DNA of 5,620 nt from Octopus sinensis (taxonomy: Eukaryota). Numbering within the stretch: position 1 is the first letter of the stretch; each line of letters begins with the position of its first letter. The stretch spans positions 1-5,620 of the forward strand of contig NW_021829988.1 in assembly GCF_006345805.1 (NCBI RefSeq), written 5' to 3'. Shown in pieces: positions 1-5,454 of this stretch. The translations under genes and the position numbers were made by a program. Below the pieces are notes generated by a model. It was not told the DNA's origin. It saw only the letters and a list, made by a program, of their open reading frames with translations, and ran no database searches.

Positions 1-143
1 CTGCTTGGTTTGGAAATCCCCTTGCCAGTTTGGCAATTCTCTGCATTCTCAACTTTCTTGATTTCCTCTCTCCAACTCGGTTCTCTCCTCTCTCTCTTTC
101 TTGTAGTTGTATATTTTATTGGCAGCTGTTTGGTCACCACGAA

Positions 144-227
144 ACACACATACACATACATACATACATATATACATACATACATACATACATACATACA
201 TACATACATACATACATACATACATAC

Positions 228-258
<31 letters not shown>

Positions 259-527
259 CTTACATACATACATACATAATACATACATACATACATGCAT
301 ACATACATACACTCATACGTACATACATACATACATGCATGCATGCATACATACATACACACATACATACATACATACACGCACACATACATACATACAT
401 ACATACAAACATACATACATACATACTTACATACATACATACATACACACATACATACATACATACATGCATGCATACATACATACATTCATACATACAT
501 ACATACATACATACATACATACATACA
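144..527. repeat. Imperfect (CATA)n/(TACA)n tetranucleotide microsatellite
   Basis: Continuous catacatacata run with scattered variants (catg, cact, caca). Explains the HTYI/MYVC ORFs. Confidence 0.97.
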
Positions 528-1062: not shown

Positions 1063-1083
1063 TATATTATATATGTATATATA
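815..1083. repeat. Compound microsatellite (CA)n-(CATA)n-(TA)n
   Basis: acacgcacacac, then catacata with two aacttacatgcatgc variants, then (AT)n from ~1031 to 1083, abutting the left end of the fold-back element. Confidence 0.95.
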
Positions 1084-1514
1084 GGAATAAAAAATGGAGT
1101 TAACGCAGGTTTAAACAAGTATTTTTTCTTTCTACATATGTTTCAAAAATTCCACTGATACTTATTCAAAAGAATAAAGGTATAAACAATGCAATCTTCT
1201 CTTCGGGAAAGGGAAAAAACGAAACTTGTCAATACGACTTTAGCAAAAAATGATGGATTCGTATAGCGATAGACAGAACGCTATTAATATTGTTTAAAAA
1301 AACGTTATATGATATAACGTCATAAGTAGCTAACAGAAAGAGTAGGGATATTAATAGTGAATGTTAAATATAAAGGAAATTAAAGTCTAAACTATATATA
1401 ATGATAGAGACTACTTATATGCACTAAAAGTATGTTTTTGCCAATGCTTACATCTGTATGCTCGTTCTATAACCGTGTTTACTAGAGTATTTTTAGAAAA
1501 AATAATGAAAAATA
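1079..1514 (-). repeat. Left arm of long inverted repeat (pairs with 1652-2089)
   Basis: Reverse complement matches 1652-2089 end to end (e.g. 1081 ataggaataaaaaatggagttaacgcagg vs cctgcgttaactccattttttattcctat ending 2087). About nine differing sites, nearly all 1-2 nt indels. Confidence 0.97.
1114..1230 (-). ncRNA. Mirror copy of the predicted hammerhead ribozyme in the left arm
   Basis: On minus: ctttc 1211-1207, CCGAAGA 1206-1200, GAAA 1144-1141, catatg 1140-1135, UA 1134-1133, gaaag 1132-1128. All core positions are identical to the right-arm copy. Confidence 0.76.
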
Positions 1515-1652
1515 GCTCAGAATTGCAGAGAAGACAGAATTTCTTGCCTTTGTCATATGGTATCGAAATTGAGAGGATCAACCTCCAAATGAAATTGTTC
1601 ATTGTGGTCTTTTAAATTCAAAATCAGTTTGCTGACCGGTACTATTCCGTTT
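1411..1652 (-). pseudogene. Frameshifted C-terminal fragment of a PLE GIY-YIG-type endonuclease ORF
   Basis: Joining frames gives KRNSTG/SKLILNLKDHNEQFHLE/LILSISIPYDKGKKFCLLCNSELFFIIFSKNTLVNTVIERAYRCKHWQKHTFSAYK* (TAG at 1411-1413; frame switches near 1636 and 1583-1595). This fits the pattern I recall for some PLE EN C-termini: T.LSK.IW.LK...F.I.W.IL....PY......C.LC..E...I......N...E....C.H..K. Recognised by eye, not by HMM. Confidence 0.75.
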
Positions 1653-2089
1653 ATTTTTCATTATTTTTTCTAAAAATACTCTAGTAAACACGGTTATATA
1701 GAACGAGCATACAGATGTAAGCATGGCAAAAACATACTTTTAGTGCATATAAGTAGTCTCTATCATTATATATAGTTTAGACTTTAATTTCCTTTATATT
1801 TAACATTCACTATTAATATCCCCTACTCTTTCTGTTAGCTACTTATGACGTTATATCATATAACGTTTTTTAAAACAATATTAATAGCGTTCTGTCTATC
1901 GCTATACGAATCCAATTTTTGCTAAAATGTCGTATTGACAAGTTTGTTTTTTTCCCTTTCCCGAAGAGAAGATTGCATTGTTTATACCTTTTATTCTTTT
2001 GAATAAGTATCAGTGGAATTTTTGAAACATATGTAGAAAGAAAAAATACTTGTTTAAACCTGCGTTAACTCCATTTTTTATTCCTATAT
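1652..2089 (+). repeat. Right arm of long inverted repeat (pairs with 1079-1514)
   Basis: Starts tatttttcattattttttctaaaaatactctag (reverse complement of sequence ending at 1514) and ends attcctatat. Same manual alignment as the left arm. Confidence 0.97.
1937..2054 (+). ncRNA. Predicted type I hammerhead ribozyme, variant core (U4->C), long stem II
   Basis: Stem I ctttc 1956-1960 / gaaag 2036-2040 (extended by T7/A6 and acaagt 1938-1943 / acttgt 2048-2053); core CCGAAGA 1961-1967; stem II 1968-2023 (13 positions with G:U pairs and one mismatch, capped by atac/gtat and ttattc-tttt-gaataa); GAAA 2024-2027; palindromic stem III catatg; GUA triplet 2033-2035. Confidence 0.78.
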
Positions 2090-2234
2090 TCAAATATTCA
2101 ACGTAAACACGAAGTTTCAACCTTTATAAACAAGGAGTTACAACATCTTTACTTGTGAGATTTTTGCTGTCCTGGTAACTATTCATTCATTTATCCGTGT
2201 TAAATGTTAACAAGGTAAAATACACTCATCTATT

Positions 2235-2271: not shown

Positions 2272-2442
2272 TTTTATTCTTTTATTTGTTTCAGGCGTTT
2301 GACTGCGGCCATACTGGAGCACCGCCTTTTAGTCGCACAAATCGACTCCGCGAGTTTTTTCTTTGTAAGCCTGATAAGTATTCTATCGGTAACTTTTGCT
2401 TGAACCACTAAGTCACGGGGACGTACACACACAAACATCGTT
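2272..2442 (-). mobile_element. 3' module of tRNA-derived SINE (same family as 5012-5419)
   Basis: Reverse complement ...acgtccccgtgacttagtggttc...ggcggtgctccagtatggccgcagtcaaacgcctgaaacaaataaaagaataaa aligns with 5251-5418 (acgtccccgtcacttagcggttc...ggtggtgctccagcatggccgcagtcaaatgactgaaacaagtaaaagagtaaa). Confidence 0.9.

Positions 2443-2784: not shown

Positions 2785-2825
<41 letters not shown>
2627..2825. repeat. Compound (TATG)n-(TA)n-(TG)n microsatellite, probably the expanded internal tract of the minus-strand SINE
   Basis: Direct reading. Lies where the plus-strand copy has its (TA)/(TG) tract (5172-5224). Confidence 0.93.
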
Positions 2826-2976
2826 CGACGGGATTCTTTCAGCTTCCGTTAACCAAATCCATTCACAAGGCTTTGGTCAGTCCGCAGAAATAAGACACTT
2901 TCCCAAGGTGCCACCCAGCTGGATTGAACTCAAAATCATGTGTGCAAACTTCTTTCAATTCAGGCACGCCAGCGCC
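2824..2976 (-). mobile_element. 5' tRNA-like head and core of SINE, diverged
   Basis: Reverse complement ggcgctggcgtgcc...gagttcaatcc...gtggcaccttgggaaagtgtctt...gaccaaagccttgtgaatggatttggttaacggaagctgaaagaatcccgtcgta aligns with 5012-5175. Confidence 0.9.
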
Positions 2977-3016
2977 TATATATATATATATTTATATATA
3001 TATATATATATATATA
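2977..3016. repeat. (TA)n microsatellite between SINE head and element-2 terminus
   Basis: Near-perfect TA run with one ttt interruption. Confidence 0.95.
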
Positions 3017-3300
3017 CTTTATTCAAAGCAGCAGAAATTTAACAAAAGCTGTTACTCGGAGTTTCACGTTCCCGTTCGTCGGACGGTTTTGTTAAAATAG
3101 AACCGAAATAACAATTTGATCAAAACTAGTTAAAGGATACACCTTTAAAAATGGATTTGTTTCATTGGTCCTTTCGAATAACGGTCTTAGGCAAGCGATA
3201 AACAAAATAAACAAAATAAATGAATTCAATATAAATTATAAAAATCGAGGAAAAACCTTAAATCGAAGAGCGGATTCAAAATACATATTGTCATTAATTA
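3017..3300 (-). mobile_element. 3' end/pLTR fragment of a second hammerhead-bearing element (probably another PLE family); upstream limit uncertain
   Basis: Minimal hammerhead with near-palindromic stem III followed by a 36-nt tail ending at a (TA)n tract, the same layout as element 1. No ORF support found; the 3300 boundary is a guess. Confidence 0.5.
3038..3096 (-). ncRNA. Predicted compact type I hammerhead ribozyme, variant core (U4->C)
   Basis: Minus strand tttaacaaaa-cc-gt | CCGACGA (3082-3076) | acg-ggaa-cgt | GAAA (3065-3062) | ctccgag | UA (3054-3053) | ac-agc-ttttgttaaa. Stem I has a 10-bp distal helix, stem II is 3 bp with a GGAA loop, and stem III actccgagt is self-complementary apart from the central C. 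Confidence 0.82.
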
Positions 3301-4221
3301 TATAGAAAATATAATCCGATTAATACAATTAATACATAAAAATTAAAATTAAAATATATTAAAATATTTCACAACAGTATATACTCATACTAAACCATCA
3401 CATATATACATATCATCAAAATACACAGATGGATGTACACAGACCACATACATATACAGACATATCAATGCAAAACGAAAATATACACACAAATACACGT
3501 ATACATATGTATACGCGATCTTGCTCGCATGCAAAACTCACTTGGTGTATACATATAGACTAGAAGTAAAAGGCAGAGAGGGGGAAGAAAAGGTAACGAT
3601 CTTATAAGCAACAGAAAGCTAAAGACGAGAGTAAGAGAAGGGGAGAGGGGCGTAAAGTTACAGGACTCAATACAAGTAACGAATGGGGAGAGAAAAAATA
3701 AGGAAAGAAAGGAAGAAAGAAAGAAGTCTGACTATGCGTAACGAACGTTCACAAAATAAAATTACGTATACATGTGTATATAAAAGTGTATATTAGCAGT
3801 TAATACACATATAAGAACACATATATAAATATATAGAGACAAGTACGTAAATACACATCCACACAAATTCAAGTGTATACATGCATACATATACATCCAT
3901 GTATGTATGTGCATAAGTATAAACACACACGCTCACTTACACATATACATAGACACGTGCATACGAATACATATGCAGGCCAATACAAATATTCACATAA
4001 ACACATGTCTAGGATCTGACGTATATACAAACAACATTATTCTTTTAAAAATTGCTGAGTGCATAATAATAAAAATTTTAGATAAAAGACATGCAAAATA
4101 TAACACCCTATATGGGATTATCTTATAAATTAAACGATTAAAGTGGGTTTATAAAATGCAATAAAATGAAATAAAATAAGTCGAAGGTTTTTCTTAAGAA
4201 ATATATCGAAATATACACAAA

Positions 4222-4625
4222 ACTAGCAGTTTCGCCCGGCGTTGCTCGGGTTTGTAAGGGAAATAAATATATATAAGCATTTTTAGAGAGTTATAGCCAA
4301 AAATTAGCAAAAAAATGCATTAAAAACGGAAAAAAATTATGGTAAATTTTTTTTTAAATCGTTGACTCATCGTAGACATTTTTAGAGAATTACTTCCCTT
4401 ATATAATAGCGAAGAAAATGCATTAAAATGGAAAAAAATGATGGTAATTTTTTTTTTTAATCGTAGACTCATCGTAGACGCACGCTAATACCCAGAAGGG
4501 CTCGATATGAATCTCGACTATAAGATACCCGGTTTTGGTTAAACTGCACCGCAAAATGTGGGAGCAGTTAGGAATCTAAATCGTAGGAGACAGACACCAC
4601 ACAACCTCACTTTTATATATATAGA
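4222..4625 (+). mobile_element. Non-autonomous Helitron-like (rolling-circle) element
   Basis: 5' actagcag followed by GC-rich hairpin cccgg-cgttgc-tcggg (4235-4250), internal tandem duplication, 3' ...cacacaacctcacttttatatatataga. Resembles invertebrate non-autonomous Helitrons that begin ACTAG plus a hairpin and end TATAGA(T). No coding support; boundaries +/-2. Confidence 0.6.
4278..4478 (+). repeat. Two-copy ~100-bp tandem repeat inside the Helitron-like element
   Basis: Units 4278-4376 and 4377-4478 both start catttttagaga, contain aaatgcattaaaa..ggaaaaaaat.atggtaa, and end aatcgt(t/a)gactcatcgtaga. Confidence 0.92.
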
Positions 4626-4817: not shown

Positions 4818-4975
4818 GTGGCTGTGTGGTATGTAGATTGCTTACCAACCACATGGTTCCGGTATCAGTCCCACTGCGTGGCACCTTGGGCAAGTGTCTT
4901 CTAATATAGCCTCGGGCTGACTAAAGCCTTGTGAGTGGATTTGGTGGATGGAAACTGAAAGAAGCCCGTCGTATA
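4818..4975 (+). mobile_element. SINE head and core, lacking the first ~9 nt and with no 3' module of its own
   Basis: gtggctgtgtggta...ggtatcagtcccactgcgtggcaccttgggcaagtgtctt...gaaactgaaagaagcccgtcgtata; roughly 90% similar to 5021-5177 by eye. Confidence 0.92.
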
Positions 4976-5010
4976 TATGTATATATATGTATATATGTAT
5001 ATAGATTTAT
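4972..5010. repeat. (TA)n/(TATATG)n microsatellite between the tandem SINE heads
   Basis: tatatatgtatatatatgtatatatgtatatagatttat. Confidence 0.88.
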
Positions 5011-5011
5011 A

Positions 5012-5419
5012 GGCGCAGGAGTGGCTGTGTGGTAAGTAGCTTGCTTACCAACCATATGGTTCCGGGTTCAGTCCTACTGCGTGGCACCTTGGGCAAGTGT
5101 CTTCTACTATAGCCTCGGGCCGACCAAAGCCATGTGAGTGGATTTGGTAGACGGAAACTGAAAGAAACCCATCATATATATGTATATGTATATATATGTG
5201 CGTGTGTGTTTGTGTGTCTGTGTTTGTCCCCCCCCTAGTATTGCTTGACAACCGATGCTTGTGTGTTTACGTCCCCGTCACTTAGCGGTTCGGAAAAAAA
5301 AACCGATATAATAAGTACTAGGCTTACGAAAGAATAAGTCCCGGGGTCGAGTTGCTCGATTAAAGGTGGTGCTCCAGCATGGCCGCAGTCAAATGACTGA
5401 AACAAGTAAAAGAGTAAAG
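5012..5419 (+). mobile_element. Full-length tRNA-derived CORE-like SINE (octopus OR-type): head, core, microsatellite, 3' module
   Basis: A-box-like tggctgtgtgg 5022-5032, B-box-like ggttcagtcc 5065-5074, ccttgggcaag motif as in CORE-SINE cores, internal (TA)/(TG) tract 5172-5224, 3' end aaacaagtaaaagagtaaa. Homologous modules recur at four other places in the window. Family name is from recall. Confidence 0.88.
5022..5074 (+). promoter_or_regulatory. Degenerate internal RNA polymerase III type 2 promoter (A and B boxes) of the SINE
   Basis: tggctgtgtgg resembles TRGCNNARYGG and ggttcagtcc resembles GGTTCRANTCC, with tRNA-like spacing (~32 nt). Confidence 0.6.
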
Positions 5420-5454
5420 TGAGTACGTAATGAACTGGTGGGTGCGGAGCAGTT

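What the first reader, a model, noticed from the sequence alone, without database searches (positions are those of the whole stretch)
1937..2054. Hammerhead ribozyme with non-canonical CCGAAGA core and a 56-nt stem II domain
Seen: every type I hammerhead element in order (stem I, C-C-G-A-A-G-A, stem II, GAAA, catatg, GUA, stem I), duplicated at 1114-1230. The normally conserved U4 of CUGANGA is C in both arms. Stem II is a long branched hairpin, whereas the PLE hammerheads I know of are usually minimal. Established: PLE hammerheads with short palindromic stem III can cleave as dimers. Inference: an atypical variant that CUGANGA-based searches would miss. The G:U at the base of stem II may reflect decay.
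Basis: partly seen in the sequence, partly recalled or inferred. Interest (0 to 1): 0.85.

Follow-up and report, generated by a model that had tools for sequence, protein, structure and literature searches.

The report
Hammerhead-like relic in octopus inverted repeat
A hammerhead-ribozyme-shaped RNA motif really is present in both arms of a 1-kb inverted repeat in octopus DNA; it is most likely a weakened copy of the ribozyme that Penelope-like retroelements carry, so it is a fairly ordinary find and not shown to be a new ribozyme variant.

Summary
At 1937-2054 (+) and 1114-1230 (-) all parts of a type I hammerhead occur in order: helix I, CCGAAGA, a 56-nt helix II, GAAA, a 2-bp helix III with palindromic AUAU loop, and GUA, with the cut expected at 2035/2036. 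Eleven of 12 invariant core bases are present. U4 is C, and the 10.1-11.1 pair is G:U.

The two copies are not independent. They are the arms of one 1,011-bp inverted repeat (1079-2089, arms about 97% identical) in an octopus-like genome.

A relaxed descriptor finds a chance match in about 0.6% of shuffled windows (1-3 per Mb). None of 75 chance matches in 24 Mb of simulated sequence had stems as long as these. The 118-nt domain is the most structured stretch of its arm (z -3.3 to -4.0).

Against membership, no Rfam hammerhead model matches, the window has no reverse transcriptase or endonuclease, and no other copy could be retrieved, so covariation and the family consensus at position 4 stay untested. 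U4C is a known, strongly deleterious natural variant.

Best reading (0.55): a Penelope-like-element-type hammerhead, crippled or weak, in two 5'-truncated head-to-head copies. Rivals: chance motif in a foldback or MITE element (0.30); genuinely active C4 variant (0.12). Interest is modest.

The parts
1079..2089 (.). Whole inverted-repeat element, 1,011 bp: two arms plus a unique centre. Its left end abuts a (TA)n/(ACAT)n microsatellite.
   Evidence: the repeat finder, MAFFT and blastn self-comparison; ends checked by eye
1079..1514 (-). Left arm. The sense strand of the hammerhead-like motif is the minus strand, and the putative 3' end of this unit lies at 1079.
   Evidence: 97.1% identity over 442 aligned columns to 2089-1652
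1515..1651 (.). Unique 137-nt centre. It is either the loop of a foldback element or the extra 5' sequence of the longer of two 5'-truncated copies.
   Evidence: No counterpart in the other arm
1652..2089 (+). Right arm. The sense strand of the motif is the plus strand, and the putative 3' end lies at 2084-2089.
1937..2054 (+). Hammerhead-like domain, right arm (118 nt), bounded by the closing stem 1937-1943/2048-2054.
   Evidence: MFE -25.7 kcal/mol, z -3.3 and -4.0. The hammerhead-constrained fold is -23.1 kcal/mol.
1956..1960 (+). Helix I, 5' strand (CUUUC), pairs with 2036-2040.
   Evidence: sequence; descriptor
1961..1967 (+). Core strand CCGAAGA: C3, C4 in place of U4, G5, A6, A7, G8, A9.
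   Evidence: sequence; one mismatch to CUGANGA, at position 4
1968..2023 (+). Helix II, 56 nt. The proximal 7 bp are GAAGAUU/AAUUUUU with two G:U pairs, including G10.1:U11.1. An irregular unbranched hairpin follows.
   Evidence: MFE structure. It is kept in 3 of the 5 larger contexts folded without the opposite arm.
2024..2035 (+). G12 A13 A14, then helix III (A2027-U2034, C2028-G2033, loop AUAU), then A17. The predicted cut is between 2035 and 2036. ACAUAUGU is an 8-nt palindrome.
   Evidence: sequence. Cofolding two copies forms the 8-bp intermolecular helix: dimer -58.4 versus -51.4 kcal/mol for two monomers.
2036..2040 (+). Helix I, 3' strand (GAAAG).
   Evidence: sequence
1114..1230 (-). 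Hammerhead-like domain, left arm (117 nt). The core CCGAAGA is the complement of 1200-1206, and the predicted cut is between 1133 and 1132 on the minus strand.
   Evidence: descriptor hit on the minus strand; base-by-base correspondence from the whole-element fold; pairwise alignment

Best explanation
The 118-nt segment is a real, discrete RNA-type stem-loop domain derived from a type I hammerhead ribozyme. It is of the kind carried in the terminal repeats of Penelope-like retroelements (PLEs) and their non-autonomous derivatives.

The 1,011-bp inverted repeat is read as two 5'-truncated copies of such a unit joined head to head, about 575 and 436 nt long, with 3' ends outward. They sit beside a microsatellite in an octopus genome. 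Each copy keeps its hammerhead 30-35 nt from its 3' end.

In an active family member, two such motifs would pair through the palindromic ACAUAUGU to build an extended helix III. [quoted passage not shown]

This particular sequence has C in place of U4 in the uridine turn and a G:U in place of G10.1-C11.1. The arms differ by only about 3% yet share both changes, so the changes were already in the template that produced both arms. They are not decay after insertion.

The motif is therefore probably a weak or dead ribozyme at this locus. In any transcript that reads through both arms it is also sequestered in a duplex of about 435 bp.

Shown: the motif, its structure propensity, the inverted repeat and the octopus context. 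Inferred: hammerhead ancestry, PLE origin, the dimer mechanism and loss of activity.
For: - All hammerhead elements are in order, with 11 of 12 invariant core bases.
- The architecture matches the published PLE and invertebrate type. Helix II is 7-8 bp, helix I 4-5 bp, and helix III 1-2 bp with a palindromic 2-4 nt loop (PMC4209133). Invertebrate hammerheads have 2 bp plus a tetraloop (PMC7229834).
- Chance rate is 0.006 per shuffled window. None of 75 chance loci in 24 Mb had stems this long. There are no other descriptor hits in the window or in 54 kb of other real DNA.
- The domain is the structural outlier of the arm: z -3.3 to -4.0, against -2 to +1.5 for other 118-nt windows.
- The hammerhead-compatible fold lies within 2.6 kcal/mol of the MFE.
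- The predicted dimer forms the 8-bp helix III.
- The sense strand of the motif points outward in both arms, as expected for head-to-head 5'-truncated retro-copies. PLEs are described as often having an inverted 5'-truncated copy forming an inverted repeat. Most PLE insertions are 5'-truncated with a single terminal repeat.
- The host is an octopus: the window's SINE-like repeat matches O. vulgaris chromosome OX597830.1. Cephalopod genomes hold Penelope elements and Rfam Hammerhead_1 hits (PMC6962438).
- C11.1-G12 would be a CpG, so U11.1 fits a CpG-to-TpG transition (inference from the sequence).
Against: - No Rfam hammerhead family matches at E<=1 on the window or at E<=10 on either isolated region.
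- U4, an invariant base of the uridine turn, is C. The most conserved helix II pair is G:U.
- The unpaired base between positions 9 and 10.1, typical of PLE mini-hammerheads, is absent in the best register.
- A 56-nt helix II is not typical of PLE hammerheads.
- The proximal helix I is not in the MFE of any context folded; a competing register is preferred.
- The window has no reverse transcriptase or GIY-YIG remnant.
- No second copy lies in direct orientation.
- No relatives were retrieved, so there is no covariation or consensus evidence.
- All stems are A/U-rich runs. Real AT-rich DNA produces these more often than my Markov null does.
- A TA or TATA target duplication, compatible with a DNA transposon, cannot be excluded.
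Confidence: 0.55

Rival explanations
1. Chance resemblance. The 1-kb inverted repeat is a non-coding DNA element (a foldback-type or long-TIR MITE-like transposon, or a local palindromic duplication). The hammerhead-like pattern is a fortuitous arrangement of A/U-rich stems around short purine-rich strings. No ribozyme was ever there.
For: - The relaxed descriptor gives 1.3-3.3 chance matches per Mb, thousands in a genome of a few Gb.
- Two of the most conserved positions, U4 and C11.1, do not match.
- Rfam models are silent.
- Long, near-identical terminal inverted repeats with a unique centre and a possible TA/TATA duplication are what a foldback or MITE element looks like.
- DNA transposons outnumber Penelope elements in cephalopod genomes (PMC6962438).
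- There is no coding remnant.
- The stems are low-complexity U-runs and A-runs.
Against: - Only 0.6% of shuffled windows hold any match. None of 75 simulated chance matches had helix I of at least 5 bp with helix II of at least 7 bp, and 9 of 75 had a palindromic helix III.
- The motif coincides exactly with the one strongly structured domain of the arm.
- Its orientation relative to the arm ends fits retro-copies.
- The arms contain no tandem subrepeats of the kind typical of foldback elements.
Confidence: 0.3
2. This is a functional, atypical hammerhead lineage in which C4 and a long helix II are the family norm. It cleaves, probably as a dimer, and is missed by CUGANGA-based searches.
For: - C4 and U11.1 are shared by arms that otherwise differ by about 3%. 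They were therefore present in the template that was mobilised or duplicated.
- A U4C hammerhead is reported to retain enough activity in vivo for viroid infectivity (PMC3088659).
- Natural hammerheads with other core deviations and with U-U at 10.1-11.1 are active.
- The dimer helix III is predicted to form.
Against: - U4C strongly reduces activity in vitro. Apart from the C3-G8 pair swap, all single and double mutants of the CUGA turn showed low activity in a comprehensive scan.
- PLE hammerheads already have low activity with a canonical core. A second weakening change sits at the base of helix II.
- No loop-loop tertiary contact is recognisable that could compensate.
- PLE clades without any hammerhead proliferate well, so mobilisation of a C4 copy does not imply activity.
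- No family data are available.
Confidence: 0.12
3. The relevant function is the long hairpin, not the motif. The inverted repeat is transcribed into a double-stranded RNA of about 435 bp that feeds small-RNA or A-to-I editing pathways, and the hammerhead-like domain is incidental.
For: The whole-element RNA is predicted to fold at -694.6 kcal/mol with every core base paired to the other arm. The host is an octopus-like genome. That cephalopods edit RNA heavily is background knowledge, not tested here.
Against: There is no evidence of transcription. Any inverted repeat has this property. It does not explain the local domain inside each arm.
Confidence: 0.03

Closest known systems
Minimal or atypical type I hammerheads in the pseudo-LTRs of Penelope-like elements (Cervera & de la Pena 2014, PMC4209133)
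   Same: - Type I topology.
- Helix I of about 5 bp and proximal helix II of 7 bp.
- Very short helix III with a palindromic loop, implying action as a dimer.
- No recognisable loop-loop tertiary contact.
- Position near the end of a repeated unit, in a copy arrangement (inverted, 5'-truncated) described for PLEs.
   Different: - C4 instead of U4.
- G:U instead of the highly conserved G10.1-C11.1.
- No unpaired base between positions 9 and 10.1.
- Helix II continues into a 56-nt hairpin.
- No RT/GIY-YIG reading frame in the window.
- The partner copy is inverted, not tandem.
Metazoan non-LTR retrozymes with type I hammerheads (Cervera & de la Pena 2020, PMC7229834; Li et al. 2026 bioRxiv 10.64898/2026.07.22.740005)
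   Same: Non-coding, AT-rich unit of a few hundred nt carrying one type I hammerhead-like motif. Helix III is 2 bp plus a tetraloop, as in invertebrate examples. A link to PLE terminal repeats is proposed.
   Different: Retrozymes are direct tandem repeats of 170-400 nt that give circular RNAs. Here there are two inverted copies and no tandem array. The usual 4-bp helix II and 6-bp helix I with conserved loops are absent.
Natural U4C hammerhead core variant in a viroid (cited in Perreault et al. 2011, PMC3088659)
   Same: The same substitution at the same invariant core position. It is precedent that C4 can exist in a biologically maintained hammerhead.
   Different: That case is a type III hammerhead in a replicating RNA with stabilising tertiary contacts. 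Activity in vitro is considerably decreased. Nothing here shows selection or activity.
Foldback or long-TIR MITE-like DNA elements
   Same: Two long, near-identical inverted arms around a short unique centre. No coding capacity, AT-rich, and a possible short TA-type target duplication.
   Different: The arms have no internal tandem subrepeats. Copy number and constancy of the termini are unknown. This class does not predict a discrete hammerhead-shaped domain oriented outward in each arm.

Membership tests
Hammerhead ribozyme (type I) | Three helices around a junction, in the order helix I 5' strand, core strand, helix II hairpin, GAAA, helix III hairpin, cleavage site, helix I 3' strand | tested here: met
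   Descriptor hits at 1961-2035 (+) and its mirror on the minus strand. The MFE gives helix I and helix II with unpaired junction strands. The constrained hammerhead fold lies 2.6 kcal/mol above the MFE.
Hammerhead ribozyme (type I) | Invariant core strand C3 U4 G5 A6 N7 G8 A9 | tested here: not met
   The sequence is CCGAAGA, with C at position 4 in both arms. The other five fixed positions match.
Hammerhead ribozyme (type I) | G12 A13 A14, the A15.1-U16.1 pair, and H17 (not G) before the cut | tested here: met
   GAAA 2024-2027, A2027-U2034, A2035
Hammerhead ribozyme (type I) | G10.1-C11.1 at the base of helix II (highly conserved, not invariant) | tested here: not met
   G1968:U2023 wobble. 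U-U at this position is tolerated in some natural ribozymes.
Hammerhead ribozyme (type I) | Score at or above threshold against the curated covariance models (Rfam Hammerhead_1, Hammerhead_3, Hammerhead_II, HH9, HH10) | tested here: not met
   No hammerhead family is listed at E<=1 on the window or at E<=10 on 1880-2110 and 1070-1290. The long helix II insertion and the minimal helix III would be penalised, so this result is weak evidence.
Hammerhead ribozyme (type I) | Compensatory base changes in helices I and II across family members | not testable with these tools
   Only two near-identical, non-independent copies exist in the window. DNA and protein-based searches returned no relatives.
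Hammerhead ribozyme (type I) | [quoted passage not shown] | not testable with these tools
   Requires in vitro transcription or RNA end mapping.
PLE-type hammerhead | Helix III of 1-2 bp capped by a small palindromic loop, allowing a dimeric active form | tested here: met
   A-U and C-G pairs plus loop AUAU. ACAUAUGU is an 8-nt palindrome, and cofolding forms it between two copies.
PLE-type hammerhead | Helix II of 6-8 bp, helix I of 4-5 bp, and an unpaired base between positions 9 and 10.1 | tested here: inconclusive
   Proximal helix II is 7 bp and helix I 5 bp. Helix II continues to 56 nt. The register with an unpaired base gives only 4 bp.
PLE-type hammerhead | Located in the terminal repeat of an element that encodes RT and GIY-YIG endonuclease | tested here: inconclusive
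   Ten stop-free stretches of the window have no Pfam RT or endonuclease match. A 5'-truncated copy would not carry them. Full-length family members could not be sought.
Metazoan non-LTR retrozyme | Direct tandem repeats of 170-400 nt, each with a type I hammerhead | tested here: not met
   The two copies are inverted, and there is no tandem array.
Foldback / long-TIR MITE | Long terminal inverted repeats, no coding capacity | tested here: met
   Arms of about 436 nt, about 97% identical, around a 137-nt centre. No Pfam hits.
Foldback / long-TIR MITE | Constant target-site duplication, and many copies with the same termini | tested here: inconclusive
   TA or TATA flanks both ends, but it is itself palindromic and part of a TA-rich tract. 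Copy number is not testable.

The most novel reading that the evidence does not exclude
An octopus lineage of PLE-dependent retroelements whose hammerhead has C4 as the family norm, with a long helix II and a G:U base pair, and which still self-cleaves as a dimer. This would be a naturally maintained uridine-turn variant in an animal genome, invisible to CUGANGA descriptors and Rfam models.
Probability: 0.12. Interest if true: 0.55.

Novelty: new member of a known kind. Interest (0 to 1): 0.3.

Why it matters
If the motif is a true hammerhead relic, it adds a cephalopod example to the well-documented link between type I hammerheads and Penelope-like elements. It also shows how such copies sit in head-to-head inverted pairs. 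That is useful for repeat annotation but not surprising.

It would matter more if the whole family carried C4 and still cleaved. Position 4 of the uridine turn is treated as invariant in search descriptors and in structural models. A maintained animal C4 lineage would mean that current hammerhead censuses undercount, and it would offer a natural test of how much the U-turn can vary.

The present data do not reach that point. They say only that the template which gave both arms already had C4.

Tried and rejected
1. Rfam covariance models, on the whole window at E<=1 and on each motif region at E<=10. No hammerhead or other ribozyme family matched. The many mir-297, mir-466 and mir-3149 hits lie in microsatellites far below gathering score and are low-complexity artefacts.

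2. Retrieval of other copies of the element.
- Exact look-up of the 63-aa ORF found nothing.
- Homology searches with two stop-free translations of the element found no candidate.
- Scans with a 24-mer from the arm end (metagenome and prokaryote-genome collections) and a 20-mer from the core region (all three collections, viral included) gave either nothing or five hits that blastn shows to be isolated 20-22-mers.
- These collections hold almost no cephalopod DNA, so this says nothing about copy number in the octopus genome.

3. Look-ups of two further window ORFs to find the source contig: not on record.

4. Host identification succeeded through the SINE-encoded ORF. The 20-kb O. vulgaris locus obtained does not contain the element and has no descriptor hit.

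5. Pfam scan for PLE proteins: negative.

6. tRNA scan for a SINE head: none called.

7. Arm-to-arm comparison for covariation. There are only three differences in the motif (two adjacent bases at 1946-1947 in the distal U-run of helix I, paired in the predicted folds, and a one-base deletion in an internal loop of helix II), so it is uninformative.

8. Target-site duplication. An 8-bp hAT-type duplication is rejected by eye. TA or TATA is possible but ambiguous.

9. Coordinate error of mine. I first placed the right end of the repeat at 2099; the correct end is 2089. Folds and simulations labelled 1079-2099 or 1515-2099 therefore include ten flanking bases. This does not affect the conclusions.

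Full report
**1. What is in the sequence**

The window is AT-rich eukaryotic-looking DNA. It is full of (ACAT)n, (TA)n and (TG)n microsatellites and SINE-like repeats.

The flagged segment 1937-2054 reads, on the + strand:
- Closing stem GACAAGU (1937-1943), a U-run, then CUUUC (1956-1960).
- CCGAAGA (1961-1967).
- A 56-nt hairpin (1968-2023).
- GAAA (2024-2027), then CAUAUG (2028-2033), U (2034), A (2035).
- GAAAG (2036-2040), an A-run, then ACUUGUU (2048-2054).

In standard hammerhead numbering this gives C3, C4, G5, A6, A7, G8, A9. It also gives G10.1:U11.1, G12 A13 A14, A15.1-U16.1, C15.2-G16.2, loop AUAU, and A17, with the cut after 2035.

There are three corrections:
- 'catatg' and 'GUA' overlap at G2033.
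- Helix II is predicted as an unbranched irregular hairpin, not a branched one.
- The copy at 1114-1230 is the reverse complement.

**2. The two copies are one object**

Self-comparison shows a 1,011-bp inverted repeat. The arms are 1079-1514 and 1652-2089, about 97% identical, around a unique 137-nt centre. The hammerhead-like domain lies 30-35 nt from the outer end of each arm. Its sense strand points outward in both.

Within the domain the arms differ only at two adjacent bases in the distal part of helix I and by a one-base deletion in an internal loop of helix II.

The arms share C4 and U11.1 while differing by about 3% elsewhere. Both changes therefore predate the event that made the two arms, unless the arms have been homogenised. 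This is an inference. The duplication consequently gives no independent support and no covariation.

**3. Is it more than chance?**

It allows at most one mismatch in the six fixed bases of CUGANGA. It requires exact GAAA, A15.1-U16.1 plus one inner pair, and H17 other than G. Helices I and II need at least 4 contiguous pairs including G:U, and helix II may span up to 62 nt with an optional unpaired base.

- It finds only these two sites in the window.
- Dinucleotide shuffles of the window give 0.006 loci per window.
- Markov simulations give 1.3-3.3 loci per Mb, depending on composition.
- The motif is therefore unexpected in a single window. A genome of a few Gb would still hold thousands of relaxed chance matches.
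- In 24 Mb simulated with the element's own composition, none of 75 chance loci had helix I of at least 5 bp together with helix II of at least 7 bp, as observed here. Nine of 75 had a fully palindromic helix III.
- These thresholds were chosen after seeing the motif, and a first-order Markov null under-represents A-runs and U-runs. The true chance rate is higher than these numbers suggest.

**4. Structure**

- The isolated 118 nt fold to -25.7 kcal/mol. Helix I and helix II are paired and both core strands unpaired. z is -3.3 and -4.0 in a second run.
- Other 118-nt windows of the same arm and nearby DNA range from z -2 to +1.5. This is the one discrete structured domain of the arm.
- The exact hammerhead register, with CUUUC/GAAAG next to the cut site, costs 2.6 kcal/mol more than the MFE, which prefers a shifted U-run/A-run pairing.
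- Helix II survives in three of five larger contexts. Proximal helix I never appears in an MFE.
- Two copies cofold at -58.4 kcal/mol, against -51.4 for two monomers. They form the 8-bp intermolecular ACAUAUGU helix, which is the extended helix III of a dimeric hammerhead.
- A transcript through the whole element folds at -694.6 kcal/mol, with every core base paired to the other arm. The motif could fold only in RNAs that start inside the element or come from solo copies.

**5. Context**

- No stop-free stretch of the window has a Pfam match. No tRNA is called.
- An ORF inside the SINE-like repeat at 5238-5540 matches a 'Hypothetical predicted protein [Octopus vulgaris]'.
- The 20-kb locus around that gene, on chromosome OX597830.1, holds at least five copies of the window's ~410-nt repeat at 87-90% identity. 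The window therefore comes from an octopus or a close relative.
- Cephalopod genomes contain Penelope elements. An Rfam scan of the giant squid genome reported 235 Hammerhead_1 loci (PMC6962438).

**6. Comparison with the literature**

- Metazoan type I hammerheads typically have a helix III of 1-2 bp capped by a 2-4 nt palindromic loop, and they act as dimers.
- The PLE mini-hammerheads have helix II of 7-8 bp, helix I of 4-5 bp, an unpaired base before 10.1 and a highly conserved G10.1-C11.1. Their activity in vitro is low (PMC4209133).
- Invertebrate retrozyme hammerheads have a 2-bp helix III with a tetraloop (PMC7229834).
- PLE insertions often include an inverted 5'-truncated copy forming an inverted repeat (bioRxiv 10.1101/2021.04.23.441226). 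Most are 5'-truncated with a single terminal repeat (bioRxiv 10.64898/2026.07.22.740005).
- The octopus motif fits the helix lengths, the palindromic helix III, the position near the unit's 3' end and the outward orientation.
- It does not fit at U4, at C11.1, at the unpaired base, or in the 56-nt length of helix II.
- C4 is not unprecedented. A U4C viroid hammerhead is cited as considerably less active in vitro yet sufficient in vivo (PMC3088659).
- In comprehensive pairwise mutagenesis, every single and double mutant of the CUGA turn had low activity, apart from the swap of the C-G pair (C3-G8 in standard numbering) (PMC9901934).
- U11.1 is what a CpG-to-TpG transition of C11.1-G12 would give. 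C4, in contrast, creates a CpG and is not explained by that route. Both points are inferences from the sequence.

**7. Membership and verdict**

The hammerhead topology and 11 of 12 invariant core bases are met. U4, G10.1-C11.1 and the Rfam models are not met. Covariation and cleavage could not be tested. I therefore do not file it as a demonstrated hammerhead.

- **Most probable reading (0.55).** A hammerhead of the PLE type, inherited in a weakened form by two head-to-head 5'-truncated copies. It is inactive or nearly so at this locus.
- **Chance motif in a foldback or MITE-like DNA element (0.30).** The stems are low-complexity. Two key positions fail. The arms, the centre and a possible TA/TATA duplication look like such an element.
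It gains only from the inference that the mobilised template already carried C4. PLE clades without any hammerhead proliferate well, so mobilisation does not imply activity.

**8. What could not be done**

No other copy of the element could be retrieved. Protein-based look-ups and searches were empty. DNA scans of the viral, metagenome and prokaryote collections gave only chance 20-22-mers. Those collections essentially lack cephalopod DNA.

The decisive analysis is an alignment of all genomic copies from an octopus assembly. It would be used to read the consensus at positions 4 and 11.1, to test covariation, and to see whether copies are solo or truncated or always full inverted repeats. That analysis remains to be run. 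So do the RNA end mapping and the cleavage assays with C4U and U11.1C revertants.

**9. Scoring**

Hammerheads in PLE-type repeats are known across metazoans, and U4C is a known natural variant. Even the favoured reading is a new member of a known kind. Interest is 0.3. The most novel reading not excluded is a family-wide, active C4 hammerhead, with probability about 0.12 and interest 0.55 if true.

Noticed in passing
window 5011-5426 (+); partial copies at 4818-4994 (+), 2808-3017 (-) and 2273-2440 (-): A composite SINE-like repeat of about 410 nt (head, internal microsatellite, tail). At least five copies at 87-90% identity lie in a 20-kb stretch of Octopus vulgaris chromosome OX597830.1 (L006). 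This identifies the window as octopus-like DNA. ARAGORN calls no tRNA in it.
   Followed up: partly
window 1079-2089: A read-through transcript of the inverted repeat would be a near-perfect double-stranded RNA hairpin of about 435 bp (predicted -694.6 kcal/mol). It is a possible substrate for A-to-I editing or small-RNA pathways in a cephalopod.
   Followed up: no
window 4278-4377 and 4377-4479: A tandem duplication of about 100 bp at 84% identity. Each copy ends in 'tcgtagac'-type short repeats. Its nature is unknown.
   Followed up: no
window 131-524, 864-1013, 2628-2829, 3765-3973: Rfam lists many mir-297, mir-466, mir-3149 and mir-1277 matches (best 63.5 bits against a gathering score of 90). 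All lie inside (ACAT)n, (TG)n or (TA)n microsatellites. They are low-complexity artefacts, not microRNA genes.
   Followed up: yes
window 1302-1320 and 1848-1866: A 19-nt near-perfect palindrome, ACGTTATATGATATAACGT, sits inside each arm of the inverted repeat, so it appears as both a direct and an inverted repeat. Its function is unknown.
   Followed up: no
window 2086-2101: An exact 8-bp tandem duplication, ATATTCAA ATATTCAA, straddles the right end of the inverted repeat. It could be a junction or insertion scar, or chance (TRF score 32).
   Followed up: no
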